From positions 1 through 64,000 of IMG/VR virus record IMGVR_UViG_3300032770_000001: 64,000 nucleotides of DNA. One strand, given 5' to 3'. The notes under the pieces were generated by a model. That model ran no database searches. It saw only the letters and a program-made list of their open reading frames with translations, and was not told where the DNA came from. How positions within the stretch are numbered: position 1 is the first letter of the stretch; every line of letters starts with the position of its first letter. Positions 16,211 through 30,895 of this stretch are shown here, piece by piece. The position numbers and the translations under genes are program-made.

Positions 16211-16633
16211 TTAGGAGAGTCCGAGGGCCTTCTTTTCGACAGCTATGCGGTTCAGGGCACGCTGGAGATCGCCGCAGGCGGCTTGATAGCCGTGGTTCGG
16301 CTGGAATCCACACAACCACCAGTCCATCGCCTTGCCCCAGAGCTTGCCTTCGCAGGACGCACGCCACGCATGGGCTGACATGGTCTCATCGTTCTGCCCG
16401 TTCATGAAGGTCACGTTCAGGAAGATGTCGAAAGCGTCTAGCCAGCGATGGATACGCCCCTCGTGGTTGGACTTCGCCATGGCGATGGCGATGTTCTCCG
16501 GCGTCATGGGCATGGAGTTTGAAGTGCCCCGGATCAGATGGTAAAGACGGAAGAGAAGGCTGACGATGACGAGGGCAGTTGCCGCGATCAGGTAGATTTC
16601 GACGCCCAGCAGAACCTTGTGCAAGATGTCCAT
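16211..16633 (-). CDS. phage membrane protein
   Basis: N-terminal TM helix; D..LN....G..DET.SA.AWR...W...DW......HxxxA motif. Confidence 0.55.
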   Translation of the reverse strand: MDILHKVLLGVEIYLIAATALVIVSLLFRLYHLIRGTSNSMPMTPENIAIAMAKSNHEGRIHRWLDAFDIFLNVTFMNGQNDETMSAHAWRASCEGKLWGKAMDWWLCGFQPNHGYQAACGDLQRALNRIAVEKKALGLS

Positions 16634-16667
16634 ACAGAAGGGTCTGGAAGTCATGGTATCATCGGGA

Positions 16668-17288
16668 ATGCAACGCAATTCCATCCATGAGGCGGGGCAC
16701 GTAATCGCCAATATCGCCCTCGGCATTCGTTTCTACGACGTGCATATCGGACGAACTTGGTACACGGACGAGAAGACCGGGCTCGTGCCGATGACGAGTC
16801 CACCAAACTCATTAGGGCATTGTGGCAGTGGGAAGGGAAAGGAACCTTTTCATCGGGAAATCGTTAAAGCCTCCGGGTACATCGCGGAATGGTTGTGGTG
16901 CAAACATAACAACCGCAGGTGGGGACGCACTTTCCGGAACATCCAGTACAGCCGGGATCGAAAGGGCATCACCAACCTTCAGCGTGCCAAACGAGCCAGC
17001 CTGAAGCTCCTCGAAGCGAACTACAAGTACCTAACAAAGCTCGCCGAACTATTCGACGCCAACCAGAACCACACGTTTAAGGAATCGGAGATTTTGCCCC
17101 TATGCGACATCTGGGAGACGAACCCGGTCTCGATGCACATGGCACTGGTGCTGAACGACAAAGGTACGTGGGACGAAGTGCCGAACGATCCCAACATGGA
17201 ATTTCATCGATACACGAGGAAGTTCAAGTGGTATCGTCCGAACTATCCGAAGCCGGAGGAAGTGCCGGACCACTGTCCGCTCAAATAA
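16668..17288 (+). CDS. stand-alone M41-like HExxH peptidase domain, counter-oriented
   Basis: SIHEAGHVIA...SGYIAE. Confidence 0.6.
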   Translation: MQRNSIHEAGHVIANIALGIRFYDVHIGRTWYTDEKTGLVPMTSPPNSLGHCGSGKGKEPFHREIVKASGYIAEWLWCKHNNRRWGRTFRNIQYSRDRKGITNLQRAKRASLKLLEANYKYLTKLAELFDANQNHTFKESEILPLCDIWETNPVSMHMALVLNDKGTWDEVPNDPNMEFHRYTRKFKWYRPNYPKPEEVPDHCPLK

Positions 17289-17290
17289 AT

Positions 17291-17366
17291 TGGCAGGGGG
17301 TGAGGGCAACGATCCCCCAACCTTCCGGGTCAAAGCCGGGTGCTCTGCCGATTGAGCTAACCCCCT
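17291..17366 (-). tRNA. trnQ: tRNA-Gln(UUG), atypical T-loop
   Basis: cloverleaf with anticodon loop CT-TTG-AC, G73, encoded CCA; T-loop ATCGTTG. Confidence 0.75.
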
Positions 17367-17369
17367 GTT

Positions 17370-17443
17370 TGGCTGCCGGGGAGGGATTCGAACCCCCATA
17401 CACTGATCCAAAGTCAGCGGTCCTGCCTTTGAACGACCCGGCA
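17370..17443 (-). tRNA. trnQ: tRNA-Gln(UUG), canonical
   Basis: U1-A72, loop CT-TTG-GA, TTCGAAT, CCA. Confidence 0.92.
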
Positions 17444-17525
17444 TCATGTGACTTCTACATCACATTTTTGCGATTTGTATCATAAAAGTGACGTGGGACG
17501 CACTTTTTGCGATATAAATCAATCT

Positions 17526-17611
17526 TGGAGCCGATGGAGGGATTCGAACCCCCGTGGGATTTCTCCGGCAGTTTACAAAACTGCTGCAATCGTCCGCTAT
17601 GCGACATCGGC
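17526..17611 (-). tRNA. trnT: tRNA-Thr(UGU) with long variable arm
   Basis: GCCGATG/CATCGGC, GCAGT-TT-TGT-AA-ACTGC, variable arm C-GGA-GAAA-TCC-CAC, CCA. Confidence 0.85.
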
Positions 17612-17863
17612 CTATGCGCGTCGGGCAAACCCGGTAAAGTCCACCACTGGTTTCGCCTTCGGCTGCGGAGGGTTCTCAATCACGAACTTGAGTTGCTCCG
17701 CAAAAATCTTTTCGTACTCGGCTTTGAGAGCATTCCCTTCGTCGATCAACTTCTGATCTCCGGTGCGGTAGCCCTCGGCTAATCTTTTAGTGAAGGCACG
17801 TCTTGCCTCCAACACTTTGGAACACAGGTAGAGTAGGTCTGACTGCTCATCTGTCAGTTGCAC
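17612..17863 (-). CDS. hypothetical protein
   Basis: ORF between tRNAs, GGAGG SD. Confidence 0.55.
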   Translation of the reverse strand: MQLTDEQSDLLYLCSKVLEARRAFTKRLAEGYRTGDQKLIDEGNALKAEYEKIFAEQLKFVIENPPQPKAKPVVDFTGFARRA

Positions 17864-17885
17864 GATCCCTCCACTTAAGGAATCG

Positions 17886-18098
17886 TTAGCAACATACTCC
17901 GTTCATAGTTTCATGTCGGGGAACGTAACAGCCGGGGCAATCAACGCTCTCATACCAGTCAATCATTTCCTTGACGAACTGTTCCTTTGTCTTGCCCAGC
18001 CGTGCGATTCGTTCCGCCGAGTACATCGGGTGATCGAAACTGCGAATCACCTGCACATGCCCACAACGGTGCTTTACTTCTTGCTGCCCTTCTCTCAT
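17886..18098 (-). CDS. hypothetical protein
   Basis: ORF between tRNAs. Confidence 0.5.
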   Translation of the reverse strand: MREGQQEVKHRCGHVQVIRSFDHPMYSAERIARLGKTKEQFVKEMIDWYESVDCPGCYVPRHETMNGVCC

Positions 18099-18163
18099 AC
18101 GCTTTTCCTAATTAGGCGCTTTTCCGCCTATTTCCGAAATATATCAAAAACCGCCTAAGAACT

Positions 18164-18240
18164 TGGAGCCGCCGAGTGGATTCGAACCACCAACCTCGTC
18201 CCTTACCAAGGGAGTGTTCTACCGTTGAAACTACGGCGGC
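18164..18240 (-). tRNA. trnT: tRNA-Thr(GGU)
   Basis: cloverleaf, loop TT-GGT-AA, CCA. Confidence 0.92.
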
Positions 18241-18241
18241 A

Positions 18242-18317
18242 TGGAGCCAGCGGGGAGGATCGAACTCCCGACCCCCGCGTTACGAGTGCGGTGCTCTACC
18301 AACTGAGCTACGCTGGC
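18242..18317 (-). tRNA. trnT: tRNA-Thr(CGU)
   Basis: cloverleaf, loop CT-CGT-AA, CCA. Confidence 0.93.
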
Positions 18318-18360
18318 ATGTTATTCTGTGTCACGAAACCCCTTAAATCGAGGGGTTTTG

Positions 18361-18591
18361 TTACGCAGAATGTTTGGCGTTCTTCCGTGGGCCTTTACGA
18401 CCTTCCCACTGCGGCAGGTTCTTCCCCGCCACGAACGCCGCTATTCCTTCATACTTCTCACAAAGCCACTTCACGTATGCGCAATCTTTCATGTGCATCC
18501 GCAAATTCCCACCTGTCCGAAGCCCACACCACCCACAGGGTGGTTCTGAGCAATCATTCGGCTCACGTCGAAATGTGGGCTCCGGTAACAT
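18361..18591 (-). CDS. hypothetical protein
   Basis: ORF between tRNAs, CxxC..H..DC. Confidence 0.45.
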   Translation of the reverse strand: MLPEPTFRREPNDCSEPPCGWCGLRTGGNLRMHMKDCAYVKWLCEKYEGIAAFVAGKNLPQWEGRKGPRKNAKHSA

Positions 18592-18596
18592 GATCT

Positions 18597-18673
18597 TGGT
18601 CCGCCCGGAGGGATTCGAACCCCCGAATGACCACGCTAATCAGGCGTGCGCTTTACCAACTGGCTACAGGCGG
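18597..18673 (-). tRNA. trnI: tRNA-Ile(GAU), atypical (U37, short D-stem, 7-nt variable loop)
   Basis: CACGC-CT-GAT-TA-GCGTG, TTCGAAT, ACCA. Confidence 0.7.
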
Positions 18674-18935
18674 AAAACTTTTCAAAAATCGCTTTGCACT
18701 CGCAGGACTCAACACTGTCGGAACCCAGCCCGAAACAATTCGGGTTCTTCCTCCACGTGCACGCTTCGACCGGATCATCCGGCAGACCGTAAGCTTCCTG
18801 CAATTTCTCCATCGCTTGAATCACTCGCTTGTACGAGCTAATCAGGGCACCAGCCTTGCTGAAGCCATCGCCGCGTACTGCTCGGCGTGCCTCTCGCATT
18901 TGCTCGATAATGTCGCCGACCTGATCCCTGTCCAT
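18636..18935 (-). CDS. hypothetical protein
   Basis: ORF whose 3' end overlaps the atypical tRNA-Ile. Confidence 0.4.
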   Translation of the reverse strand: MDRDQVGDIIEQMREARRAVRGDGFSKAGALISSYKRVIQAMEKLQEAYGLPDDPVEACTWRKNPNCFGLGSDSVESCECKAIFEKFSACSQLVKRTPD

Positions 18936-18940
18936 AAACT

Positions 18941-19017
18941 TGGTGGGCACGGTTGGATTTGAACCAACAGCCTTCCGGTTATCAGCCGGATGCTCTAAAC
19001 CATTGAGCTACGCGCCC
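18941..19017 (-). tRNA. trnI: tRNA-Ile(GAU), canonical
   Basis: cloverleaf, loop CT-GAT-AA, ACCA. Confidence 0.93.
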
Positions 19018-19388
19018 TAAAACCCTCTCAACTCATCCCACTTCTTCCAGTCGGCCTCGACAGCCTTCCGGAACTTCTCGAACGCCGTCTCATTCGCGCC
19101 GTCATACAACAGATACTCCGGAGCGATCACGATGCCGAGGTTCGTTTCATCATACGTGCGCTGCGCTGGCACCGCACCGCAGTCTCGCACGATGTGAACG
19201 ATGGCAGCCTTGGCACCGTCCTCCCCGTACAGTCGGAGAGCCTCTCTCACACCCGCCCAACAATGGCGGTGACGCCGATGCTTCGGGCCGAACTTTTTGA
19301 ACAGTTCGTCCATCCAGTGATTCACGTTCTCGTGTCGGGCTCCCAAGAGCCTCTCACAGTCCCGGCAATGGTCATTGAAGTGTGCCAT
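19017..19388 (-). CDS. His-rich hypothetical protein
   Basis: H..HC....G..H..V..WMD...HR..RH motif. Confidence 0.6.
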   Translation of the reverse strand: MAHFNDHCRDCERLLGARHENVNHWMDELFKKFGPKHRRHRHCWAGVREALRLYGEDGAKAAIVHIVRDCGAVPAQRTYDETNLGIVIAPEYLLYDGANETAFEKFRKAVEADWKKWDELRGF

Positions 19389-19395
19389 AAACGTC

Positions 19396-19416
19396 AAAAG
19401 CCGCCTTTCGGCGGCT
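19396..19416 (-). terminator. intrinsic terminator (candidate attenuator)
   Basis: AGCCGCC-GAAA-GGCGGCT followed by TTT. Confidence 0.75.
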
Positions 19417-19442
19417 CATCTGTTTGATTCTGTTCGGGTTAT

Positions 19443-19541
19443 TTAGCCATCCCAACCATCTTCAAACGTAAAGCCGCCCGTCGTCGCAGTTGTAATTCGT
19501 TGCGTCGATGTCGTAGTTCGCGTTTGAGATGTCATGTTCAT
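19443..19541 (-). CDS. Thr-rich leader peptide candidate (32 aa, 11 Thr)
   Basis: MNMTSQTRTTTSTQRITTATTGGFTFEDGWDG* between promoter and terminator; no strong SD. Confidence 0.55.
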   Translation of the reverse strand: MNMTSQTRTTTSTQRITTATTGGFTFEDGWDG

Positions 19542-19579
19542 CGTCAGTTCTCAGCAGTCAACACTAATGCCACTCTCTA

Positions 19580-19608
19580 TAAATACCACACCGTAGTCCA
19601 TTTGTCAA
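19580..19608 (-). promoter_or_regulatory. sigma70-like promoter for the leader/tRNA cluster
   Basis: TTGACA-17-TATTTA (imperfect -10). Confidence 0.55.
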
Positions 19609-21554
19609 CACTTGCGGAAAAATAATTTATGTTCCTTTATTCCAAAATTCGTGGAGAAGGGGGGCGATACGCCGTCGATCTGCCTCTAGTTGTTCGAAAG
19701 AAAACTCCCAATTAGCAGGTCGAGGACACTTATCCGGACAGGACGAGCAGAACTTTTTATCAAACTCTGCAAAGGTGGGGTTCAAAGAATGGCCCGAAAG
19801 TCCATATTTGTGTTTTTCACAAAAAATCAACTTTTCCCCAACAGGCACAGTCGTCGTGTTGCGCACTAAAACTTCGAGAGGACTAGATCGACCCAACGAA
19901 GTGTGAATAAACTGACAAGTTCTAAGGATGTCTGCGGGTTTTCTATCCTTGATGCCCTGCCGAATCAATCTTGCGTAGTAATCATTTGGATTATTGATGT
20001 CAACGCCCCAACTTCGAGCCACGTTCAATAGTGCTTGGTCAGCTAATTCATCATCATTTCGAGCTTCGTAATCACCATCAACATGTTCCCCGCGTATACG
20101 TTTGAGATTTCGTTCGAGAAAGTCGAGTGCTATCCTACGTTGACTGGGGTCAATTATCCTCCGTGCCATCTCCCTCCCCCACTCTGAATATTCCTCCGTG
20201 TTTAATGATGCGACTGTGCCGCAAATTAACGTCAAAGCATCTGCATCGTCATATCGTTCAGAAATAGAAGCTGCGATTTGGCAGATGTGAAAAGCGGTTT
20301 TCCTAATCTGCTTTGCAGTATCGATCCTTCCGTCGTTATCCAGAACGTGGAGGTAACCTACTAAATCCGCACAAACGGCGCACATTACTTTTGGTAAAAA
20401 AGCTCGGTAGGGAGAGTTACGAGCAATCTGAATCAGCCTAACCATTTGCTTGAATTTAGACCACAGACGAAGCTCTGCTTTTCTTTGCAAAATCAAATTG
20501 ATTAGGAGGAACGATCTGTCCGATTCACCCATCCTCATCATTTCCAACAGCAACTTTCGAGCCATCAAAAGACTCAGTATGTAACTCCCGGCATAGCCAA
20601 TTTCCGCTGATCTTTCATTTAACATTGCGTACAACTTCAAAGCACCGTAAGCGTGTTGAGTTAATTTTCGCAATTCTCGTGAGTAGTGCATTCGAACCTC
20701 ACTGAATTTACCAGTGGAGCCTTCACTGGAAGCGGCGACTATTTGCGCGGCTGTGCGTTCAGCGTACAGCAGAGCGAAAAATCGAACCTTCAAGGCTATC
20801 TCATTGTCGTCCACAACAGACATAAGCTTGGCTTTTATTTCCTGCAATTCAATCAGTCCGGGCTTATCGTTATCACGGAAAAATTCAGCCACTTCTCGAA
20901 TTGACTGACTTTGTTTGTCTTTTGGATCGAGAGCTACTCGTTCCGTTTCAAGCTCCCCATGCGTGGAGTTATTTGTATTTCGCACGATCTTCGCTGCTGC
21001 GGCTGCGGTTGAAGACCCACTTTTCACTATAATTACATCCCATGAACGCTCAATGGCGACCAACAGAGCTTCTGAAGTGACTGGCAATTCTTGATCGGTT
21101 GGAACTTCGACCACCAAGGTTTTTTCTTTTTTATTTCCCAGTTTTTCAGCGGGGAATTCCGCGAGATGGATAGATGCCCAAAATAAACGTTCACTAGTGA
21201 TGTCGGCGTGGACTAGAAACATAGGAGTACGGAGTTTTCTCCAATGAAGAAGGTGTTTTTTCTTTACGCGCACGCGCACGTAGCTTCCATCTTTCGCATA
21301 GTCCGATTGACATGAACTCTTAAGCTGCGCCTTGAACTCGGACTCTGATGGCTCTTTTTTACCGTCAGCGGTAACAACAGGAATCCAAACCTCAAAATCC
21401 ACGCCGAAAAGATCGCGATCACGTGGAATTTTAACGACAATCCAACGTAATTGAACTCCTAATACGCGCTCGAAGAGATTTTCACCCGCTACGTCAACTT
21501 CATAAGTAATTGGGATAGTCATCTCTTACTCCATTTGTCAACACTTGCGGAAAA
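19597..21554. mobile_element. cassette bounded by 25-bp direct repeats (19597-19621, 21530-21554)
   Basis: TCCATTTGTCAACACTTGCGGAAAA at both ends; visibly AT-richer single gene inside. Confidence 0.7.
19627..21522 (-). CDS. DUF4365 (PD-(D/E)XK-like) domain protein, 631 aa
   Basis: D.FGVDFEV....FKAQLKS...YxRV...HWRKL..PMFLV; C-terminal Cys/His cluster. Confidence 0.75.
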   Translation of the reverse strand: MTIPITYEVDVAGENLFERVLGVQLRWIVVKIPRDRDLFGVDFEVWIPVVTADGKKEPSESEFKAQLKSSCQSDYAKDGSYVRVRVKKKHLLHWRKLRTPMFLVHADITSERLFWASIHLAEFPAEKLGNKKEKTLVVEVPTDQELPVTSEALLVAIERSWDVIIVKSGSSTAAAAAKIVRNTNNSTHGELETERVALDPKDKQSQSIREVAEFFRDNDKPGLIELQEIKAKLMSVVDDNEIALKVRFFALLYAERTAAQIVAASSEGSTGKFSEVRMHYSRELRKLTQHAYGALKLYAMLNERSAEIGYAGSYILSLLMARKLLLEMMRMGESDRSFLLINLILQRKAELRLWSKFKQMVRLIQIARNSPYRAFLPKVMCAVCADLVGYLHVLDNDGRIDTAKQIRKTAFHICQIAASISERYDDADALTLICGTVASLNTEEYSEWGREMARRIIDPSQRRIALDFLERNLKRIRGEHVDGDYEARNDDELADQALLNVARSWGVDINNPNDYYARLIRQGIKDRKPADILRTCQFIHTSLGRSSPLEVLVRNTTTVPVGEKLIFCEKHKYGLSGHSLNPTFAEFDKKFCSSCPDKCPRPANWEFSFEQLEADRRRIAPLLHEFWNKGT

Positions 21555-21560
21555 TTATTT

Positions 21561-21773
21561 TTACTGCCTGCGTGCCGCCCGAACCCGAACTCTACCGTCT
21601 ATGAAGTAGGCTTCGAGGTTCCCGGCGTCCATGTGGTTGAACAAACCGCCCATCATCTTGACCGCTTTGGCGTGAACTTCTTCCTTGCTTTCGATGTCGA
21701 GAGGGAAGCCGTACCGCCTCTTGAACGCCGACATCAACAAATCGCAGGCTTCTTCCTTCGTAAGCAATCTCAT
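21561..21773 (-). CDS. hypothetical protein
   Basis: coupled ORF. Confidence 0.5.
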   Translation of the reverse strand: MRLLTKEEACDLLMSAFKRRYGFPLDIESKEEVHAKAVKMMGGLFNHMDAGNLEAYFIDGRVRVRAARRQ

Positions 21774-22504
21774 ACCGTGTAATCAGGCAATTTCAATTTG
21801 CGGTCACGCCAATGTAGGGGCTCGTCCGGTGGAATCTTTGCCATGCGCTCCGGAGTGAAGTTGAACTTCTCAGCCTCGGTCGGATCGATCAACTCTGTAT
21901 TCGGGCCGCAAAAGACTTTGTGTGACCGTAGATGCAAATTGTCTCTCATGCAGATGCCAGTATCACAGGCACCGCAGGATCGACCGAACGCCCACTGCCG
22001 GAAGCATACTTCCTTCCCGCAACACATGCAATGGAACGGAGCACGAAACCGCCAGCCCTTGAAATCGAAGTGAAGATCAGGAGGCGACGGCGAATGCAGA
22101 TAGCCGAGACATCCCGGACATGCCGGGTGTTCGGCGGTCGGGAGATGATAACCTGAACAGGTGCCGCAGAACTTCAGGGTCTTGCGTTGTTCTGGGGTCG
22201 GATCAGCCGTGTAGCCATTCCGAGTTCGCATGTCTTCGAAGTTTTGCTTTCGCCGTAAAGCGTCCTCGGTGATGATCCTGTACCGCTCGGCATCGCACAA
22301 ATCTTCGATGGTGTATTCGACACCCGTGCAGTCTATTACGCCCCGGCAGCAGTAGCCGGAGACTCTGCCTAAACCGATAATGGTTGCCATGCGGTTGCCA
22401 CAGCACGGGCAGTCCAGTTTGGGGGCGTTCTCGGCGTCTTTCATCGCCTTTCCGAGATCGGAAGACCACTGCTCGAATTCAGGAGAATCAAAAATTCCGT
22501 TCAT
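21770..22504 (-). CDS. multi-CxxC hypothetical protein
   Basis: several Zn-binding motifs. Confidence 0.65.
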   Translation of the reverse strand: MNGIFDSPEFEQWSSDLGKAMKDAENAPKLDCPCCGNRMATIIGLGRVSGYCCRGVIDCTGVEYTIEDLCDAERYRIITEDALRRKQNFEDMRTRNGYTADPTPEQRKTLKFCGTCSGYHLPTAEHPACPGCLGYLHSPSPPDLHFDFKGWRFRAPFHCMCCGKEVCFRQWAFGRSCGACDTGICMRDNLHLRSHKVFCGPNTELIDPTEAEKFNFTPERMAKIPPDEPLHWRDRKLKLPDYTV

Positions 22505-22815
22505 CAGTCATCCATCAGTTGGCAGTTGGTCATGCCGTGACAAGCGCAAATGTTTGGGTTGTTGTAAACCTTCTGCCAGCCTCTCAGTTCCGGCTTCGCT
22601 TTCCACCGATCCACGGAGGCTTTGACCAGCGCACGCCATTCATCGGCGTCCGCCTGTGTCCAGCGACCCTCTGCTACCAACCATTCTAACATAGAAGTGA
22701 CGGCTACGACGCAACGGTCGCATACGTCCATCGGATTGCCCTGCACGGTGTGGTAGTTCCAGCACCGGGGACATTTGATGCCGGGGGCTCGCTCGACTTT
22801 AACCTCTACGCTCAC
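22504..22815 (-). CDS. stand-alone IleRS C-terminal Zn-finger (zf-FPG_IleRS)-like protein
   Basis: VKVERAPGIKCPRCWNYH......VCDRCV. Confidence 0.65.
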   Translation of the reverse strand: MSVEVKVERAPGIKCPRCWNYHTVQGNPMDVCDRCVVAVTSMLEWLVAEGRWTQADADEWRALVKASVDRWKAKPELRGWQKVYNNPNICACHGMTNCQLMDD

Positions 22816-23030
22816 GCAGCCGCCCCATGCCATGGGTCAGGCGTACTGTACTCGCACAGGACTCGCTTGTAGTCCTTGAACGGCGAACGGCACTTGGGAC
22901 ACATCTTCCCCGCCTTGATGTCTCGTTCGTCCTGCTCGGCTTCACGTATATCCCGCTGCCGACCGCAATCAGGACAGTAGGCGCAATCGCTCTCGCAGAA
23001 GTCTCCGCATTTGATACATCGAGCACTCAT
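22812..23030 (-). CDS. small Zn-finger protein
   Basis: four CxxC motifs. Confidence 0.55.
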   Translation of the reverse strand: MSARCIKCGDFCESDCAYCPDCGRQRDIREAEQDERDIKAGKMCPKCRSPFKDYKRVLCEYSTPDPWHGAAA

Positions 23031-23275
23031 TCAATTTCCCCCGACCGTAAATAAAGTTCCTCAAGCTGATCGACTTCGTGCTTTTCGCGGGTCGGCATCC
23101 GCCAGCCATTGCCTACAGTGCAGGTGCCGTCCGGATGTACTTCCCAGCCCACTTTCTCGCAATATATCCGGTCTGGAAACGGGTTCCAGTTGGCGAACAT
23201 TGCCTCGATGAGGCTCTTGTCGAACTCTGGAAACTCCATCTTCTGAAAATCTTCGCGGCTGTAGTTCTCACTCAT
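23027..23275 (-). CDS. hypothetical protein
   Basis: ATGA-coupled ORF. Confidence 0.5.
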   Translation of the reverse strand: MSENYSREDFQKMEFPEFDKSLIEAMFANWNPFPDRIYCEKVGWEVHPDGTCTVGNGWRMPTREKHEVDQLEELYLRSGEIE

Positions 23276-23571
23276 GACAAGAAGATCGGAACCTCTTCTT
23301 CCTTCAACTCGAACACCGGAACGTATCGGGCAACGATTCTCATGTACGGATAGCCGTAACGACGGGCATCCATAAATTCGCAGAACGCCCCGCAACGGCA
23401 ATTCTCGGAGATGCGCCCCTGATATTTCATCTCCATCAGACGATTAAGAATCAGGAAACTGATCTCGTCTCCAGTACGCTGGGTCATGGCTTTGCCCTCG
23501 TAAGATGAGCAGACCTCGTACATCATCGCCTTGACAGCCTCTTTGAGTTCTTCCGGCGTCTCAATTGGCAT
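23272..23571 (-). CDS. hypothetical protein
   Basis: coupled ORF. Confidence 0.5.
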   Translation of the reverse strand: MPIETPEELKEAVKAMMYEVCSSYEGKAMTQRTGDEISFLILNRLMEMKYQGRISENCRCGAFCEFMDARRYGYPYMRIVARYVPVFELKEEEVPIFLS

Positions 23572-23968
23572 GAGCGAAATTCTCCTGCATCTCCTCCAGC
23601 CATTTCGTGTGGTTGGAAACGTCCTTTTTGTATTGTTGAATTGCAGCTTTGACCGCATCGTTGGGGTCGCGATACTCTTTGTCATAACCCAACGTGAATG
23701 ACAGGGCCGGGACGGAAGTGGTGACGTAAAAGGAACAGTGGGATGCAGAGCGTCCCTGAGACCCGCCGAGAAAAAGCCGAAGTGGGGCACCAACCATAAC
23801 CAACTCGTAGTGCCAAGCGTCTTTATCTGCGGAGATTCGACGAGCCCAGCAACGAACCTCCCACTTGCCAAATTTCATGGCCTTGAGGAGTTCTTTGCCC
23901 TTCGCCAACGCTTCCGCTTTGGTTTCGGTGCCGACTGCGCTGCTCAGTTCTTCATAATTCATGCGCAC
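23561..23968 (-). CDS. hypothetical protein
   Basis: coupled ORF. Confidence 0.55.
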   Translation of the reverse strand: MRMNYEELSSAVGTETKAEALAKGKELLKAMKFGKWEVRCWARRISADKDAWHYELVMVGAPLRLFLGGSQGRSASHCSFYVTTSVPALSFTLGYDKEYRDPNDAVKAAIQQYKKDVSNHTKWLEEMQENFAHAN

Positions 23969-24231
23969 CCACCATCATGTCCCTTTCCAAGCGTACAGAA
24001 TTGCGGGGCGGAATTCATGCCGCCCAGTACAAGTTCCTTGCCACAGAGGACGCCTTGCTTACCGCGATAGCGCCAGCCGGGAGGGGCGACGACTTCTATC
24101 GAACCGTCATTATAGTGGGCTTCCAGTAGACCGTCAGGTCGCCCACCAGCCATGTGTACCAGCTTGCGATCCGGATTCGGATGAATCTCATTGCAACAGG
24201 GACATTTCATTGACTTGCCCATTTCCACCAA
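23959..24231 (-). CDS. hypothetical protein
   Basis: coupled ORF. Confidence 0.5.
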   Translation of the reverse strand: MVEMGKSMKCPCCNEIHPNPDRKLVHMAGGRPDGLLEAHYNDGSIEVVAPPGWRYRGKQGVLCGKELVLGGMNSAPQFCTLGKGHDGGCA

Positions 24232-24298
24232 ATCGCAACAATTGCGACGATGGCTGCCGGGATAATCAGGGATGCAAGTATTTCACGAATTTTGTTCA

Positions 24299-24628
24299 TT
24301 ACAATCCCAGTCTTTCTTTGCGGCACACCTTGCAGGAGTTCTCCCACATGATGATTCCGTGGGGGCAGCGACGGGCTTCCATCTCCGGTGTGATGACATG
24401 CTTCCCGTAGTTCGGGTCTTTGGCGTTCTTGAGGTACCGTTTGATCGAGTCCACGGTAATCATGGAACATTGCTGATCGGAGCAGTGGTTGGGTTCCCCA
24501 TCGCAGGTGCAATGCCAGCGCCAGCCGAAAATGCCGTCGTACCACTTCGGCTTGCAGCCAGCGGCGACGGCCATCTCGAAGAGCTTGTCGTTTGTTGCTT
24601 TCTTATCTTTAATGACGAAAGTCATCAT
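24299..24628 (-). CDS. hypothetical protein
   Basis: ORF with GAGG SD. Confidence 0.55.
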   Translation of the reverse strand: MMTFVIKDKKATNDKLFEMAVAAGCKPKWYDGIFGWRWHCTCDGEPNHCSDQQCSMITVDSIKRYLKNAKDPNYGKHVITPEMEARRCPHGIIMWENSCKVCRKERLGL

Positions 24629-24732
24629 CTTCTTCCTCTTCTTCCTGCTTCGGTGGAATCACGAAAATGTTCTTGCTCGGACAGTACGGATTTTTGCACT
24701 CCGGGTGTCCGTTGTAAAACCACATGGGATGT

Positions 24733-24951
24733 TCACAGTGCGAACAGGTCATAATCCAGCATTTCGTCCGTGCTCATGGCGTCCACACGGTCATAGAGTT
24801 CCTGTCGATAAAGTGCATTCGGGAGGCTCTGAGCCTCGCCACGGCGAACCTTACCGATCTCTTCCCAGAAGATTGCCAGCTTGACCCGGTGCCGCATCTG
24901 TGACGCCCGGTAGTCCCGGTACGAGTTCCAAACGTCCCTGAGGATTCCCAT
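24733..24951 (-). CDS. hypothetical protein
   Basis: TAATG coupling. Confidence 0.5.
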   Translation of the reverse strand: MGILRDVWNSYRDYRASQMRHRVKLAIFWEEIGKVRRGEAQSLPNALYRQELYDRVDAMSTDEMLDYDLFAL

Positions 24952-25337
24952 TACTCTTTCCAGTCGTGTTCCCAGACGTTATTTTCGGTCGGACACATCT
25001 TGCAGAAGTTTCCTACCTCACAACCGAAATGAGCGTCCTTGGGATGGTTACAGCACTTTCCAATGCCCATCGCCTTCTTGACCACGATCTCAGCCGCTTT
25101 GCGGGCCATGCCTCGTCCTTCAACCAGACGGGTGACGCGACGTTCGAAATCGCTGTGCCATTGAGGATCGACTTTCTCCAGAGCCTTGCCGAGGTCGGAT
25201 GGATAGACTACAGCGATGTCGTAATCCACTTCGGCTTTTTCGTCATCGTTTGTGGCGGCGAAGTGGATGCCGTTATGGTTCCGCGTCAGATTCGCAACCT
25301 CATCGAAGAACGCTTCGAGCTTTTCGAGTCTAGTCAT
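24951..25337 (-). CDS. hypothetical protein
   Basis: coupled ORF. Confidence 0.55.
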   Translation of the reverse strand: MTRLEKLEAFFDEVANLTRNHNGIHFAATNDDEKAEVDYDIAVVYPSDLGKALEKVDPQWHSDFERRVTRLVEGRGMARKAAEIVVKKAMGIGKCCNHPKDAHFGCEVGNFCKMCPTENNVWEHDWKE

Positions 25338-25809
25338 CGTCGTCTACAACCCCCTTCAGATACTCCGGGCTTTCTGGGTTGTAAAAATCATCCGTATAGA
25401 TGGACATGATGCGTTCCTCTTTGTAGCCGAACGCACGACCGAGGTTGCGGTGAGCTTCGACCGCAATGTTCGCCGGAGACCCAGTTTCACGTTGTTTCCA
25501 CAGATCGGTTAGATCGTCGCCCCATACAATCACGTCACCGCCACTGGAATCTTCTTTAGCGAATCGAACGTCAGGAAAGCCGTGGGGACGCATACGGAGC
25601 TTGCGCAGCACTTCATCCATTGCTTCATCACTGACAACAACGGAGCCCGCACGACGGTATTTGCCACAAGGAATGATAAGAGTGGGTTCTGTACGCCAGC
25701 GTTCGACTACCAGAATCGAACGATCCACCAGTTCTTCCTCGCGTAGGAGGAGTCTCCACCAGCGAAGCACTTCTTCTTTGTTGGGGACGATGATCTCTAT
25801 GGACGCCAC
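25330..25809 (-). CDS. hypothetical protein
   Basis: ORF downstream of tRNA array. Confidence 0.55.
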   Translation of the reverse strand: MASIEIIVPNKEEVLRWWRLLLREEELVDRSILVVERWRTEPTLIIPCGKYRRAGSVVVSDEAMDEVLRKLRMRPHGFPDVRFAKEDSSGGDVIVWGDDLTDLWKQRETGSPANIAVEAHRNLGRAFGYKEERIMSIYTDDFYNPESPEYLKGVVDDDD

Positions 25810-25851
25810 ATAGAAATAATACCGCGAGAGGAGGTTCCTTGGGAAGAGAGT

Positions 25852-25929
25852 TGGTGCCCTCGGCGGGATTTGAACCCACGACGCACGAGTTTAGAATTCG
25901 CCGCTCTGACCTGACTGAGCTACGAGGGC
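25852..25929 (-). tRNA. amber-suppressor-type tRNA (CUA), A73
   Basis: GCCCTCG/CGAGGGC-ACCA; by standard numbering GCGAA-TT-CTA-AA-CTCGT (A31.C39 mismatch). Confidence 0.7.
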
Positions 25930-25931
25930 TT

Positions 25932-25977
25932 TGGTGGGGCAGCGGTGAATCAACACCTGCGCTTGCGCTACTGCCCC
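25932..25977 (-). ncRNA. 46-nt mini-tRNA lacking the anticodon arm
   Basis: GGGGCAG-TA-GCGCAAGCGC-A-GGTG(TTGATT)CACC-G-CTGCCCC-ACCA. Confidence 0.7.
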
Positions 25978-25978
25978 A

Positions 25979-26052
25979 TGGCACACCCGGTGGGATTCGG
26001 ACCCACATGCGCGGTGTTAGAGACCGCTGTTCTGCCAGTGAACCACGGGTGT
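25979..26052 (-). tRNA. amber-suppressor tRNA (CUA), Trp-like body, G73
   Basis: ACACCCG/CGGGTGT-GCCA; perfect stem GCGGT-CT-CTA-AC-ACCGC. Confidence 0.88.
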
Positions 26053-26092
26053 ATTTTCAAAAAGACAATCGTCTTTTATTCCGTACAAAACT

Positions 26093-26142
26093 TGGTGGGC
26101 GGTGATGATTTGACTCACCCAGCTTTCGCTGTTTTACCGCCC
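26093..26142 (-). ncRNA. 50-nt mini-tRNA lacking the anticodon arm
   Basis: GGGCGGT-AAAA-CAGC(GAAA)GCTG-GGTGA(GTCAAA)TCATC-ACCGCCC-ACCA. Confidence 0.72.
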
Positions 26143-26143
26143 G

Positions 26144-26225
26144 TGGCACGCTCGGAAGGACTCGAACCTTCGACCCCTCAGTTAAATACTGAGTGCTCTG
26201 AACAAACCAACTGAGCTACGAGCGT
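26144..26225 (-). tRNA. trnK: tRNA-Lys(UUU) variant with A33 and expanded D-loop
   Basis: CTCAG-TA-TTT-AA-CTGAG; D-loop AGTTGGTTTGTTCA; GCCA. Confidence 0.75.
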
Positions 26226-26226
26226 A

Positions 26227-26302
26227 TGGTGCGCGGTGAAGGAATCAAACCCCCGACCTCCGGGTCTTGCGACCCGGCGCTCTAACACTGAGCTAACCGC
26301 GC
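26227..26302 (-). tRNA. tRNA-like RNA with 8-nt or GNRA-closed anticodon arm
   Basis: GCGCGGT/ACCGCGC-ACCA; CCGGGTC-GCAA-GACCCGG; D-loop lacks GG; T-loop TTTGATT. Confidence 0.7.
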
Positions 26303-26303
26303 A

Positions 26304-26335
26304 TGGTGGGCACCCCAACTTTCGCCAGAGCACCC
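26304..26335 (-). ncRNA. 32-nt 12-bp minihelix with GAAA loop and ACCA end
   Basis: GGGTGCTCTGGC-GAAA-GTTGGGGTGCCC-ACCA, six G.U pairs. Confidence 0.68.
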
Positions 26336-26344
26336 GTACAAACT

Positions 26345-26438
26345 TGGAGCAGACGCCGTGACTTTCGTCTCGGTCGCGAATAGAATCTCTTCGCCGTAGC
26401 AATCCGTCGAAGCAATCCCTCAACGCCTTTTCGTCCGC
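26345..26438 (-). ncRNA. 94-nt tRNA-like element with G3.U70 acceptor stem
   Basis: GCGGACG/CGTCTGC-TCCA; CCG..GAC-GAAA-GTC..CGG arm; shares the CCA-AGTTT trailer with other tRNAs here. Confidence 0.45.
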
Positions 26439-26445
26439 GTGCATA

Positions 26446-26880
26446 TTAAGCCCCGATACGATCCTGTATCGGATAGCCTCCCTCAAACTTCAAAAAAAGA
26501 TTTGGAGCAGGAGCAGCCTCCGCGTGTCTCCACAAACCGTAGTTCGAGAGTACACGGCGCTGCTCCTGCGTGAGCGGGACCGTGGCGACAGCCGTCAAAC
26601 CAAGGTTGTCGTCCGGCTCCGAAAACACGGAGTACCCGATTTCTTTGTCTTTCAACTTGTTGATAACACGGAGTAAAGCGGACTTGTCCGGCACGCCGAT
26701 CACCACGAGATGCGGAATCTGATCGTAAGACGGATCGAGACCCTTCGCCATTTCAAACGTGGCGTGGTTGCTTTGAACTATCTGTTGTGCTAGGGAAATG
26801 TCTTGCCGAACGAAGACGTAGAAGTAGTGTGGTGCTGGTTGCTGCTGATTAACCTACAGATCGCCGATTGCTTTACGCAT
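26446..26880 (-). CDS. Pth2-fold (PTRHD1-like) peptidyl-tRNA hydrolase with in-frame amber at 26854-26856
   Basis: AGGAG SD, ATG 26880: MRKAIGDL*VNQQQPAPHYFYVFVRQDISLAQQIVQSNHA...HLVVIGV...L....I.YSVFSEPD....TAVA..P. Confidence 0.8.
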
Positions 26881-26927
26881 TTGGTTTGCGCTCCTAAACA
26901 TGAGATGTGGTAGTTCTCGAAAAGGTT

Positions 26928-27209
26928 TCACGTGCGAAAAAATAATTTCTTGAAAAAGCCGACCAACCGTTCACGCCATGAGAGATTGATCCAAACCGCT
27001 TTCCACGTTCCCTCATGTGGCAGTACAATCACGCCCCGGCATGGCGGCACAACCAGAACACTCAACCCGTCAATCGAGCCTTGAATCGTAAGGCAGCCGC
27101 CGCCGAGATTCTTGATGACCATCTCACGACCGAACTCCGAGACTGGCAGCGTGATAGTCAATAGCGGCTCCGGCCCATGCGTTCTTTTTCGTTGTTCGTC
27201 CGAAGCCAT
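26928..27209 (-). CDS. hypothetical protein
   Basis: ORF in array. Confidence 0.5.
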   Translation of the reverse strand: MASDEQRKRTHGPEPLLTITLPVSEFGREMVIKNLGGGCLTIQGSIDGLSVLVVPPCRGVIVLPHEGTWKAVWINLSWRERLVGFFKKLFFRT

Positions 27210-27347
27210 TCCAGACGCTTTGCGATAGCAGCGTCGATCAGCTTCTCCTCAAACCGATCAATTACGAAATCTGTGAGTGACGGGATAGGACACGTCAGAC
27301 GGGTATGAATTTCCAGTTGTCCGATGCGCACTTCAAGATTGCGAAGT

Positions 27348-27716
27348 CTATTTCGCTTTCTTTGTAAGCTCGGCACGGTACTCTTTGAAGAACGGCGTTG
27401 CCCAGACTTTCCTGTCGATGCCATTTTGATCCGCGTGAATCCAGAACCCAAAAGCTTCTTCGGTAAAAACCGGATGCGGCTTCAGGTTGATTTCGCCCTC
27501 CCAATACACACTACCATCGGGCGAGAAAATTTTCAAGTGATCGCCGTCGCGAAGATAATGCAGCCCGTCATACGACCAGCGTTCGTGAGGCCAATCCTCG
27601 GTCGGCGGCTGAATGAAACGTTCGTCCTGAATCGCCCACCACCCACCCTCAGTTCCGGTCTCGGAATGCAGGTGGAGTTTGCCGTGGATTACTTGTGGAG
27701 CCATCTGCGTGCCCAC
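27348..27716 (-). CDS. hypothetical phage protein
   Basis: G.LH..SETGTEGG.WA.QD...YDGL..L..GD.L.I motif. Confidence 0.6.
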   Translation of the reverse strand: MGTQMAPQVIHGKLHLHSETGTEGGWWAIQDERFIQPPTEDWPHERWSYDGLHYLRDGDHLKIFSPDGSVYWEGEINLKPHPVFTEEAFGFWIHADQNGIDRKVWATPFFKEYRAELTKKAK

Positions 27717-28435
27717 TCCGTGAGGGAACCCGTCTTGCCCGTCGTTGGTGTCGTCACGATGCCCTCGTCTTCCAGTTTCGTTTCCGGAACTTCGGTAGTT
27801 GTCTCTTCGCCGGAAGGCGTCTCCACCGTTTTTTCAGCGACCATGCCAGTTGCTTTTGCGAACTCTCGGCCCTCTTCTTCAACGTCGTAGCCGGGTTTGA
27901 ACAGGTCTTTCTTGTTCACCTTGCCTACAATGCAAATAGCCTCAGCGTCAAGAGCCCCGACACCGGAGAGATTAACCGTATCCTGTGCTCTGTTTTGTGA
28001 AACATGGGCACCATAGGTACGCATGATCCGCTGCTCTTCAATCCATTCCTTGATTTTCTGCTCTTTTTCTTCGTCAGTTTCGGCCTCTTCGGGAGCGGAG
28101 GGAAAATTGACTTGATCGTAGGTGAGTCCGGCTACTTCATTCGCCTTAAAACGATCTGCCTTGTTGAGCGAACGCTTGGATTGTGCGTCAGGATCGAATG
28201 GAACGTCAAAGGTCGGAGGCGTGGGGGCTTCTTTTTCTTTCCCCGCCGCCCACTCTAGCGCCCGTGTGCCGATGATGAGAGCAGTATTTACATCCTCCCG
28301 CGTTTCGGCGAGAGATTGTTCGCCAGAAGGTGGAAAGAATTCTTCCAACTCGGCGGGTGTAATACGAGCAGGGCAGTCGGACGCATGGCTATGCGTAATC
28401 TCGGCTGCCCCACAGGTGCAGGAGAACTGGGACAT
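27689..28435 (-). CDS. acidic hypothetical protein
   Basis: TAATG-coupled ORF. Confidence 0.6.
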   Translation of the reverse strand: MSQFSCTCGAAEITHSHASDCPARITPAELEEFFPPSGEQSLAETREDVNTALIIGTRALEWAAGKEKEAPTPPTFDVPFDPDAQSKRSLNKADRFKANEVAGLTYDQVNFPSAPEEAETDEEKEQKIKEWIEEQRIMRTYGAHVSQNRAQDTVNLSGVGALDAEAICIVGKVNKKDLFKPGYDVEEEGREFAKATGMVAEKTVETPSGEETTTEVPETKLEDEGIVTTPTTGKTGSLTEWARRWLHK

Positions 28436-28983: not shown

Positions 28984-29119
28984 TGCTGTTCTCCTAAATT
29001 GGTATTGCCTCAGCCGAGGAGTTCCTAGTGTGTCACCCCGGCTCAACTGCTTAACCGCCGCTACTCCACCAGCCAACCCCTTTTTACCAGTGCGGGCCTA
29101 GTTTGCATTCGACCCGAAC

Positions 29120-29240
29120 GACGTTTACAGTGCGTCTGCAAACCGTCACCGGAGGGACACCATCGATCCCTTTATCCAGTGCAAAGCCATCTACGCCCAC
29201 GGGACTACTATCGGGGTACACTCGTCTGCTGCCCGTGGTC
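29120..29240 (-). ncRNA. candidate structured intergenic RNA
   Basis: CCACGGG/CCCGTGG stem, GGGA/TCCC stem, and an 11-bp GACG(G)TTTGCAG/CTGTAAACGTC hairpin with a G.U pair on the minus strand. Confidence 0.3.
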
Positions 29241-29257
29241 ACTGAGGCTATACCTAT

Positions 29258-29485: not shown

Positions 29486-29509
29486 ACCATGAAATACCGA
29501 CTTGATCGG

Positions 29510-29725: not shown

Positions 29726-29737
29726 GGGAGAACCCCC

Positions 29738-30832: not shown

Positions 30833-30895
30833 GTTCGTTCCCTCTCAGGCAACCTTCTGTTCACAAAATCCAACTGTTCATTACGAATGAACGTC

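What the first reader, a model, noticed from the sequence alone, without database searches (positions are those of the whole stretch)
19396..19608. Thr-sensing attenuator candidate controlling a phage tRNA cluster with three tRNA-Thr isoacceptors
Seen, on the minus strand: TTGACA-17-TATTTA, then a 32-aa ORF (19541-19443) with 11 Thr codons (ACA/ACG/ACT), 2 CAA and 1 ATT, then the terminator AGCCGCC-GAAA-GGCGGCT-TTT. Directly after the tandem ACG ACG, the ORF contains GGCGGCTTT (19478-19470). This is identical to the terminator's 3' arm, so it can sequester the 5' arm as an antiterminator. Downstream lie tRNAs Ile(GAU)x2, Thr(CGU), Thr(GGU), Thr(UGU) and Gln(UUG)x2, which read the leader's enriched Thr codons and its CAA and ATT codons. 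Known: this is thrL-type ribosome-mediated attenuation logic. Inference: the phage would express replacement tRNAs only when charged tRNA-Thr is depleted, either by host tRNA-destroying defence or by demand from its very Thr-rich virion proteins. The leader's SD is weak.
Basis: partly seen in the sequence, partly recalled or inferred. Interest (0 to 1): 0.82.

Follow-up and report, generated by a model that had tools for sequence, protein, structure and literature searches.

The report
Codon-polling leaders gate phage tRNA operons
In front of each of its tRNA gene clusters, a 456-kb phage carries a tiny test gene written in the codons that cluster's tRNAs read, followed by a terminator hairpin; this looks like a switch that makes phage tRNAs only when they run short, which I could not find described for tRNA genes.

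Summary
On the minus strand, 19608-19389 holds a promoter-like site, a 32-codon ORF with 11 Thr, 2 CAA and 1 ATT codons, a copy of the terminator's 3' arm inside the ORF, and a hairpin with a T tract.

It is not a one-off. The window belongs to a 455,708-bp phage genome with about 65 tRNA genes sorted into clusters. Six clusters start with the same rare promoter motif and a short ORF. Five of the six also have a terminator hairpin.

Each ORF contains codons for nearly every anticodon species of its own cluster: 5/5, 11/12, 5/5, 5/5, 5/5 and 7/8. The true leader-to-cluster assignment is the best of 720 permutations.

Leaders of four of the six types recur in related phages (helicase 55-67% identical) and in metagenome contigs. 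They keep the reading frame, the cognate codon run, the hairpin over the stop codon and the terminator. One substitution is compensated in both the antiterminator and the terminator pairing.

No matching Rfam family or paper was found.

Verdict: these are ribosome-mediated attenuators of phage tRNA operons, a new variant of a known mechanism. Translation and termination are inferred, not shown.

The parts
19580..19630 (-). Promoter-like site. It has an A/T-rich upstream stretch, TTGACA (19608-19603), a 17-nt spacer that ends in TGG, and TATTTA (19585-19580).
   Evidence: Sequence. The motif TTG[ACT][ACT]A-N13-16-TGGTA[TC] has 8 hits in 456 kb on both strands, and 6 of them lie at the heads of tRNA clusters. 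The generic scan did not call it.
19443..19541 (-). Leader ORF of 32 codons plus TAA. Its Shine-Dalgarno sequence is weak.
   Evidence: Homologous ORFs occur in G004, G005, L193, L196, L199 and L201.
19479..19532 (-). Run of regulatory codons, codons 4-21. It holds 10 Thr codons (ACA, ACG, ACT), 2 CAA, 1 ATT and 2 CGA.
   Evidence: all five anticodon species of the cluster are sampled. CGA is enriched in the leaders.
19470..19479 (-). Region 2, the antiterminator strand: GGGCGGCTTT. It is identical to the terminator's 3' arm.
   Evidence: in the nascent-RNA fold it pairs with all 8 nt of the 5' arm. In the shuffle control, 10 of 200 shuffles did as well.
19432..19457 (-). Small hairpin with the TAA stop codon in its loop (GGTTGGG ... 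CCCGAAC).
   Evidence: Folds. An equivalent hairpin over the stop codon is present in every leader folded.
19389..19417 (-). Intrinsic-terminator-like hairpin: GAGCCGCC, loop GAAA, GGCGGCTT, then TTGACGTTT.
   Evidence: Hairpin energy is -15.4 kcal/mol. The stem is invariant in 7 Thr leaders and one extension pair covaries, AU x3 and CG x2.
19017..19388 (-). ORF of 123 codons between the terminator and the first tRNA. It is absent at this place in relatives and is probably an insertion.
   Evidence: Weak DUF6915 match below the curated cutoff. In G004 and G005 the T tract abuts tRNA-Ile.
17291..19017 (-). The regulated tRNA cluster: Ile(GAU) x2, Thr(CGU), Thr(GGU), Thr(UGU) and Gln(UUG) x2, with small ORFs between them.
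   Evidence: ARAGORN and Rfam.

Best explanation
The region is a ribosome-mediated transcription attenuator at the head of a phage tRNA operon. It is one of six such units in this genome.

Proposed mechanism:
1. A host-type promoter starts a transcript whose first element is a short ORF.
2. The middle of the ORF is a run of the codons read by the tRNAs encoded downstream. Here these are ACN, CAA and AUU, for tRNA-Thr x3, tRNA-Gln(UUG) and tRNA-Ile(GAU).
3. If those charged tRNAs are plentiful, the ribosome runs to the stop codon and melts the small hairpin that holds the stop. It then sits between region 2 and the terminator's 5' arm. The terminator hairpin forms and RNA polymerase stops before the tRNA genes.
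4. If any polled tRNA is scarce, the ribosome stalls in the run. Region 2 (GGGCGGCUU) stays free and pairs with the 5' arm as soon as that arm is made. The terminator cannot form and the tRNA genes are transcribed.
5. The result is negative feedback that holds each group of phage tRNAs at the level translation needs.

Shown: the sequence architecture, its recurrence, the codon-to-anticodon match, its conservation and the alternative pairings.

Inferred: that the ORF is translated, that the hairpin terminates, the direction of the switch and the natural trigger.
For: 1. Recurrence. Six units share the promoter motif, and 6 of its 8 genome hits are at tRNA cluster heads. Each unit has a short ORF, and five have a GC hairpin plus T tract.

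2. Codon match. The leaders sample 5/5, 11/12, 5/5, 5/5, 5/5 and 7/8 anticodon species of their own clusters.
- The rare TTA codon sits in the Ser leader, whose cluster holds Leu(UAA).
- CTA, TTG, CTG and CTT each occur once in the Tyr/Leu leader.
- Gln is CAA before Gln(UUG) and CAG before Gln(CUG).
- TGG follows the run in the His/Arg leader, before a tRNA-Trp that ARAGORN missed at default settings.
- The true leader-to-cluster assignment is the best of 720 permutations.
- Per-leader null coverage is 0.02-0.16, giving a product of about 5e-8.

3. Conservation. Relatives with helicase identity of 55-67% keep aa-sorted tRNA clusters and leaders of four of the six types: Val/Gly/Ala, Tyr/Leu, Pro and Thr.
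- Those leaders sample 4/4 to 13/13 of their own anticodons.
- Four more Thr leaders came from metagenome contigs.
- Substitutions inside the Thr run mostly swap among Thr, Ile, Gln and CGA codons.

4. Alternative pairing.
- In 13 of 13 leaders folded, the nascent RNA pairs the terminator's 5' arm with an ORF segment 10-27 nt before the stop.
- Each ORF's 3' half pairs better with its own arm than with the others' arms; 4 of 720 permutations are as good.
- In the Val/Gly/Ala family a G-to-A change in the arm is matched by C-to-T in both region 2 and the 3' arm.

5. With a ribosome placed on the stop codon, the terminator is the predicted structure in at least 15 of 17 leaders.

6. In relatives the T tract ends 0-40 nt before the first tRNA, and no other promoter of this type lies inside the clusters.
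Against: - No transcript or ribosome data exist. No RNA run could be listed.
- Shine-Dalgarno sequences are weak. In relatives the ATG lies only about 9 nt after the -10 element, so the mRNA would be nearly leaderless.
- The T tract of the Thr unit is short (4 T), and the generic scan did not call the promoter or the terminator.
- Shuffling the ORF shows that some pairing of a GC-rich arm with a GC-rich ORF is common. Per-leader p ranges from 0.04 to 0.9.
- At equilibrium the terminator remains the best structure in about half of the 'stalled' simulations, so the switch would have to be kinetic.
- In the Thr and Tyr/Leu leaders region 2 ends 25-27 nt before the stop. A terminating ribosome would therefore not cover it directly.
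- No clear 1:2 pause hairpin was seen.
- The Pro unit has the leader and alternative hairpins but no T tract.
- Some leader codons have no cognate phage tRNA. Examples are GAA in G000, and GTC and GTG in G006, whose cluster lacks Val(GAC) and Val(CAC).
Confidence: 0.72

Rival explanations
1. The leaders are translated sensors of tRNA supply, but the output is not an intrinsic-terminator switch. Ribosome position would instead control Rho access (polarity), RNase processing or the stability of the precursor. The hairpin would be a processing or stability element.
For: The Pro unit has the leader and mutually exclusive hairpins but no T tract. In G003 its last arm overlaps the 5' end of tRNA-Pro. 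The antiterminator pairing is statistically weak in shuffles.
Against: Five of six units in G000 and all Thr, Val/Gly/Ala and Tyr/Leu leaders in relatives have a GC stem directly followed by a T run. With a ribosome at the stop, the terminator is the predicted fold.
Confidence: 0.13
2. The promoter drives the tRNA cluster constitutively. The hairpin is a leaky terminator or insulator, and the short ORF is either a micropeptide gene with another role or not translated at all.
For: Shine-Dalgarno sequences are weak and there is no expression data. Small ORFs rich in one amino acid are common in this GC-rich genome: 70 ORFs have at least 30% of one residue.
Against: This does not explain why each ORF carries the codons of its own cluster, down to rare codons and the CAA/CAG split. 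It does not explain why the frame, the codon run and the stop-in-hairpin are kept across diverged phages. It also does not explain why the ORF's 3' half is complementary to its own terminator arm.
Confidence: 0.07
3. The leader RNA senses tRNAs directly, in the manner of a T-box, by codon-anticodon pairing without a ribosome.
For: The leader displays the codons of the downstream tRNAs, and the regulated product is tRNA.
Against: No T-box or other Rfam family matches at E up to 1. The codons lie in a conserved ATG-to-stop frame. Up to 13 anticodon species are sampled in series, which no single specifier loop could do. No conserved T-box bulge or stem I was seen.
Confidence: 0.03

Closest known systems
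Leader-peptide transcription attenuators of amino-acid biosynthetic operons (trpL, thrL, hisL, leuL, pheL; general knowledge)
   Same: A promoter-proximal short ORF with a run of regulatory codons. An ORF-embedded strand can pair with the 5' arm of an intrinsic terminator. Ribosome position chooses between antiterminator and terminator.
   Different: The regulated genes are tRNA genes rather than biosynthetic enzymes, so the loop closes on the sensed molecule itself. Each leader polls a whole panel of isoacceptors, up to 12-13 anticodons and several amino acids, often with one codon per tRNA. No clear 1:2 pause hairpin was found. A conserved hairpin holds the stop codon. The units are encoded by a phage. 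No Rfam leader model matches.
ilvL / ilvGMEDA and ilvBN leaders (multivalent attenuation by Leu, Val, Ile; general knowledge)
   Same: One leader senses several amino acids at once through mixed codons.
   Different: These sense three related amino acids for a shared pathway. Here the mixture follows the content of the tRNA cluster (for example Lys, Arg, His, Gln, Asn, Trp), and synonymous codons are chosen by isoacceptor.
pheM leader of pheST and T-box riboswitches (regulation of aminoacyl-tRNA synthetase genes; general knowledge)
   Same: They regulate a component of the translation apparatus in response to the availability of charged tRNA.
   Different: pheM controls a synthetase and senses only Phe. 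T-boxes bind uncharged tRNA directly without a ribosome, and no T-box model matches here.
Phage tRNA gene clusters as known in cultured phages
   Same: Clusters of tRNA genes interspersed with small ORFs and homing-endonuclease-like genes.
   Different: In the examples I read, a consensus promoter sits 20-100 nt before the first tRNA with no leader (IMG/VR loci L008, L012, L062, L065, L085), and the tRNAs are not sorted by amino acid (Sinorhizobium phage Phosso). E. coli pheV also has no leader.

Membership tests
Ribosome-mediated (leader-peptide) transcription attenuator | A short ORF immediately downstream of a promoter and upstream of the regulated genes | tested here: met
   Present in six units in G000 and at least 15 more in relatives.
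Ribosome-mediated (leader-peptide) transcription attenuator | Enrichment of regulatory codons tied to the regulated function | tested here: met
   The best of 720 leader-to-cluster assignments. Near-complete sampling of each cluster's own anticodons.
Ribosome-mediated (leader-peptide) transcription attenuator | An intrinsic terminator (GC stem plus U tract) between the leader and the regulated genes | tested here: met
   Five of six G000 units and all Thr, Val/Gly/Ala and Tyr/Leu relatives have it, with hairpins of -14 to -22 kcal/mol. The Pro unit lacks a U tract. Termination activity was not measured.
Ribosome-mediated (leader-peptide) transcription attenuator | A mutually exclusive antiterminator that uses an ORF-embedded strand | tested here: inconclusive
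   For: nascent folds in 13 of 13 leaders, the own-versus-cross pairing test with 4 of 720, and a three-way compensatory change. Against: the shuffle control is weak and the equilibrium folds are mixed.
Ribosome-mediated (leader-peptide) transcription attenuator | A 1:2 pause or anti-antiterminator hairpin that synchronises ribosome and polymerase | tested here: not met
   No consistent hairpin pairs the codon run with region 2 in the folds. A conserved hairpin over the stop codon is seen instead.
Ribosome-mediated (leader-peptide) transcription attenuator | Leader translation, and read-through that depends on charged tRNA | not testable with these tools
   No RNA run was listed. The phage is an uncultured wetland phage.
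Rfam leader families (Thr_leader, His_leader, Leu_leader, Trp_leader and others) | A match to the curated covariance model | tested here: not met
   cmscan at E up to 1 over window 16500-32000 and over the five other leader loci returned only tRNA, tmRNA and chance hits.
T-box riboswitch | A match to the T-box model (stem I, specifier loop, T-box sequence) | tested here: not met
   No match.

The most novel reading that the evidence does not exclude
A lineage of huge phages runs a modular supply-and-demand controller for its own translation apparatus. Every tRNA operon is gated by a leader peptide that polls, codon by codon, each isoacceptor encoded in that operon, so phage tRNAs are replenished only when a particular tRNA is depleted by demand, by host shut-off or by anticodon-nuclease defence. 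The suppressor-tRNA operon may be gated analogously by a conserved in-frame TAG in its first ORF, which would link the system to a stop-codon recoding switch.
Probability: 0.6. Interest if true: 0.92.

Novelty: new variant of a known kind. Interest (0 to 1): 0.86.

Why it matters
tRNA genes are usually treated as constitutively or growth-rate controlled. How tRNA-rich phages time and dose their tRNAs is an open question.

A leader that reads out the availability of each isoacceptor and feeds back on the genes for those same tRNAs would be a new regulatory target class for attenuation.

It would also be a natural multi-codon sensor of tRNA supply, and a plausible inducible answer to tRNA-cleaving defences.

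The units are short (about 150-250 nt), modular and easy to test in reporter or cell-free systems. They could serve as isoacceptor-specific biosensors.

Tried and rejected
- The neighbouring 631-aa gene (DUF4365) proved useless for finding relatives. It matched only the same phage.
- The promoter pattern scan of IMG/VR gave 116+ mostly unrelated hits. Those next to tRNAs have no room for a leader. The 490-kb contig G001 is not a relative by this criterion.
- Terminase Pfam models found nothing in the genome.
- The exact promoter pattern is absent from the relatives. Their -35 differs, but the UP-like stretch and TGGTATTAT are kept.
- A His/Arg leader pattern found only the same phage. The Ser and His/Arg leaders therefore have no comparative support.
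- The cultured phage collection holds no relative; only the tRNAs matched. Phosso's tRNAs are not aa-sorted.
- I recalled a possible attenuator before E. coli pheV. The sequence shows only a promoter directly before the tRNA, so I dropped it as a precedent.
- Literature searches for attenuation of tRNA genes or phage tRNA leaders found nothing relevant.
- RNA-seq: none was listed.
- Covariation in the Thr terminator stem: the stem is invariant, partly because of my search pattern, so it is uninformative.
- MAFFT puts the G000 Val/Gly/Ala terminator arm one column out of register. I therefore tabulated partners per sequence instead.

Full report
**1. The observation**

- TTGACA lies at 19608-19603, followed by a 17-nt spacer and TATTTA at 19585-19580.
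- A 32-codon ORF runs from 19541 to 19443.
- GGCGGCTTT lies at 19478-19470.
- The hairpin is AGCCGCC, loop GAAA, GGCGGCT (19416-19399), followed by TTT, GACG, TTT.

The ORF has 11 Thr codons (ACA x3, ACG x6, ACT x2), two CAA and one ATT. ARAGORN and Rfam place Ile(GAU) x2, Thr(CGU), Thr(GGU), Thr(UGU) and Gln(UUG) x2 downstream at 19017-17291.

Three points weaken the bare observation.
- The -10 hexamer matches the consensus at only 3 of 6 positions, although TGG in front of it gives an extended -10.
- The T tract is short, and the generic scan called neither site on this strand.
- A 123-codon ORF (19388-19017) lies between the hairpin and the first tRNA.

An ORF this rich in Thr is rare but not unique. 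Four of 2067 ORFs of 25-40 codons reach 11 Thr, and two of those four are this ORF.

**2. The context changes the picture**

The window is the start of a single 455,708-bp virus record with 54% G+C. ARAGORN finds 61 tRNA genes plus a two-piece tmRNA. Rfam adds a few more tRNAs.

The tRNA genes are sorted by amino acid into clusters. Genome coordinates:
- Ile/Thr/Gln at 17-19 kb.
- Val/Gly/Ala/Cys/Asp/Glu at 91-94 kb.
- Tyr/Leu at 128-131 kb.
- Pro/Met/Phe at 133-140 kb.
- Ser plus Leu(UAA) at 271 kb.
- Trp/Gln(CUG)/His/Arg/Asn/Lys at 284-291 kb.

I tested whether other clusters have analogous leaders, and they do. The motif TTG[ACT][ACT]A-N13-16-TGGTA[TC] occurs 8 times in the whole genome on both strands. 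Six of those hits are at the heads of these six clusters: -19608, +90901, +128447, +132561, +270365 and +283521. All are preceded by an A/T-rich stretch of the form AAAATAATT.

Each promoter is followed by a short ATG ORF of 25-43 codons. In five of the six units a GC-rich hairpin with a T run follows.

**3. Codon-to-anticodon match**

With standard wobble rules, each leader contains at least one codon for nearly every anticodon species of its own cluster:
- Thr leader: 5 of 5.
- Val/Gly/Ala leader: 11 of 12.
- Tyr/Leu leader: 5 of 5.
- Pro/Met/Phe leader: 5 of 5.
- Ser/Leu(UAA) leader: 5 of 5.
- His/Arg group leader: 7 of 8.

The details are telling.
- The Tyr/Leu leader uses CTA, TTG, CTG and CTT once each. 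They stand before Leu(UAG), Leu(CAA), Leu(CAG) and Leu(GAG).
- The fifth Leu codon type, TTA, is rare (2.7 per 1000). It appears instead in the Ser leader, directly before seven Ser codons, and Leu(UAA) is the one Leu tRNA in the Ser cluster.
- Gln is written CAA before Gln(UUG) and CAG before Gln(CUG).
- The run Lys-Arg-Lys-His-Gln-Arg-Arg-Asn-Asn-Arg in the His/Arg leader is followed by TGG. Rfam and a relaxed ARAGORN run show a tRNA-Trp(CCA) at 283747-283825 as the first gene of that cluster.

Statistics:
- The true leader-to-cluster assignment gives the highest cognate-codon fraction of all 720 permutations.
- Against 2216 short ORFs of the same genome, the per-leader chance of such coverage is 0.02-0.16. 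The product is about 5e-8.
- CGA, a rare codon here (4.3 per 1000), is interspersed in the runs: 6 of 184 leader codons, P about 1.5e-4. It is kept in relatives.

**4. Relatives**

The flanking 631-aa gene has no homologues apart from other assemblies of the same phage. A helicase (phrog_2488) did find relatives.
- It found IMG/VR contigs at 66-67% identity (G002-G005).
- As an alignment it found one contig at 55% identity (G006).

G003-G006 carry tRNA clusters sorted by amino acid in the same way. Leaders of four types were found in them.
- Val/Gly/Ala: four further leaders, in G003, G004, G005 and G006.
- Tyr/Leu: two further leaders.
- Pro/Met/Phe: two further leaders, plus two more contigs found with a DNA pattern.
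- Thr: two further leaders.

A metagenome scan with a Thr-leader pattern added four more Thr leaders (L193, L196, L199, L201). Each is followed by the hairpin and by Ile/Thr tRNAs 24-300 nt downstream.

In all of these the ATG-to-stop frame is preserved despite about 20% nucleotide divergence and several indels. Alignment A1 shows 3-, 12- and 15-nt gaps inside the ORF and only 1-nt gaps after it.

The relatives' leaders again sample 4/4 to 13/13 of their own cluster's anticodons. For example, a GGG codon is present in G005, which has Gly(CCC), and absent in G004, which does not.

Inside the Thr run, differences between genomes mostly exchange Thr, Ile, Gln and CGA codons for one another. That fits selection on codon class rather than on peptide sequence.

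In G004, G005, L196, L199 and L201 the T tract ends within about 40 nt of tRNA-Ile. The ORF that follows the hairpin in this window is therefore probably an insertion. G006 and L193 have other insertions at the same place.

**5. Structure**

All leaders share one layout: the codon run, then region 2 inside the ORF, then a small hairpin with the stop codon in its loop, then the terminator's 5' arm, loop, 3' arm and T tract.

Evidence for the alternative pairing:
- Folding the nascent RNA up to the loop pairs the 5' arm with an ORF segment 10-27 nt before the stop in 13 of 13 leaders tested.
- With a ribosome footprint placed on the stop codon, the terminator is the predicted structure in at least 15 of 17 leaders.
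- Each ORF's 3' half pairs better with its own terminator arm than with those of the other units. Only 4 of 720 permutations do as well, and they merely swap the three units that share a GCCGCC arm.
- In the Val/Gly/Ala family, one arm position is G in G000 and A in four relatives. Its partner is C versus T both in region 2 and in the 3' arm. That is the pattern expected for two mutually exclusive helices.

Evidence against, or limits:
- Dinucleotide shuffles of the ORF often pair with the GC-rich arm too. Per-leader p ranges from 0.04 to 0.9.
- In full-length equilibrium folds with a stalled ribosome, the terminator still wins in about half of the leaders. The switch would therefore have to be kinetic, as in classical attenuators.
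- The Thr terminator stem is invariant among the seven Thr leaders, partly because my search pattern required it. Only a loop-proximal pair covaries.
- I found no convincing 1:2 pause hairpin.
- The Pro unit has a region 2 (GCGCGGGG), a complementary region 3 and a region 4, but no T tract. In G003 region 4 overlaps the 5' end of tRNA-Pro. Its output step is unclear.

**6. Mechanism**

The best-supported reading is ribosome-mediated attenuation applied to tRNA operons. Fast translation of the leader, when all polled tRNAs are available, takes the ribosome to the stop codon. There it opens the stop hairpin and separates region 2 from the arm, so the terminator forms.

A stall on a hungry codon in the run leaves region 2 free. 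It captures the arm before the 3' arm is transcribed, so polymerase reads into the tRNA genes.

Geometry fits. Most cognate codons lie more than 12 nt upstream of region 2. In the window's leader, however, stalls on codons 18, 20 and 21 would mask region 2.

Because the product is the sensed tRNA, the circuit is a direct negative feedback. The sensor would also respond to amino-acid starvation, which more tRNA cannot cure.

I could not determine whether the natural trigger is late-infection demand, host shut-off or tRNA-cleaving defence. Several large ORFs have 14-17% Thr against a genome mean of 7.1%.

**7. Comparison with what is known**

The logic is that of the trpL, thrL, hisL, leuL, pheL and (multivalent) ilvL attenuators. 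The sequences match no Rfam leader or T-box model.

The differences are as follows.
- The target class is tRNA genes.
- The leaders poll many isoacceptors, often with one codon each.
- A hairpin holds the stop codon.
- There is no 1:2 element.
- The setting is a phage.

Seven full-text searches found no report of leader-peptide control of tRNA genes in cells or phages. The E. coli pheV upstream region, which I half-remembered as a precedent, has no leader. Other phage tRNA clusters that I read have promoters abutting the first tRNA.

I therefore class this as a new variant of a known kind.

**8. Limits**

- Nothing here shows transcription start, translation or termination.
- The source is a wetland metagenome and no RNA run was listed.
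- The Ser and His/Arg leaders are known from this phage only.
- Coverage is not perfect in either direction. Some anticodons are not sampled, and some leader codons lack a phage tRNA.

Noticed in passing
window 26880-26446 (-), upstream of tRNAs at 26302-25852: An ORF with a good Shine-Dalgarno sequence (AGGAG) and ATG has an in-frame TAG at codon 9 (26856-26854) and then 135 more codons (no Pfam hit). It lies directly upstream of the two suppressor tRNA(CUA) genes. The TAG and the frame are conserved in G004 and G005, where the tRNA-type promoter precedes the ORF. So the suppressor operon also starts with the codon its tRNAs read, which may be a read-through gate.
   Followed up: partly
window 26227-26302 and 26147-26225 (-): Two odd tRNAs sit beside the suppressors. 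ARAGORN calls one with a 4-base anticodon. The other is found only by Rfam and has an anticodon loop that reads UAUUUAA.
   Followed up: no
window 30867-31271 (-): A two-piece (permuted) tmRNA with tag ending AMAMAAAA. It is preceded by a -10 region (TGGTACTATAGTAG) like that of the tRNA promoters.
   Followed up: no
all leaders; window 19520-19518 and 19499-19497: The rare codon CGA is interspersed in the regulatory runs (6 of 184 leader codons against 4.3 per 1000 in long ORFs, P about 1.5e-4) and is kept in relatives. It may act as a general slow codon or as a cross-check on tRNA-Arg(ACG).
   Followed up: partly
genome 283747-283825 (+), outside the window: A tRNA-Trp(CCA) that default ARAGORN missed is the first gene of the His/Arg cluster. 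Further tRNA-like hits with long inserts lie at about 89932-90070 and 385701-385803.
   Followed up: partly
genome 204536-205036 (+), outside the window: The same promoter type is followed by about 450 nt of structured non-coding sequence, with a 30-nt element repeated twice, before a 740-codon ORF. No tRNA is nearby.
   Followed up: no
window 19388-19017 (-); L184 about 4050-3650; L193 after 3498: Different ORFs are inserted between the terminator and the first tRNA in different genomes: a weak DUF6915-like ORF here and an HNH-like ORF in G006. The junction may be a hotspot for mobile genes that would then be under leader control.
   Followed up: no
leader C-termini, e.g. window 19463-19446: Leaders of different families end alike (E/D-G-W-D/G-G/D/E/A, then stop). 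The same bases form the stop-codon hairpin. Whether the peptide also slows release at the stop is open.
   Followed up: no
whole genome: Several very large ORFs have 14-17% Thr (for example window 49207-56841 at 13.8%). TAG still ends 45 of 288 long ORFs despite the suppressor tRNAs.
   Followed up: partly
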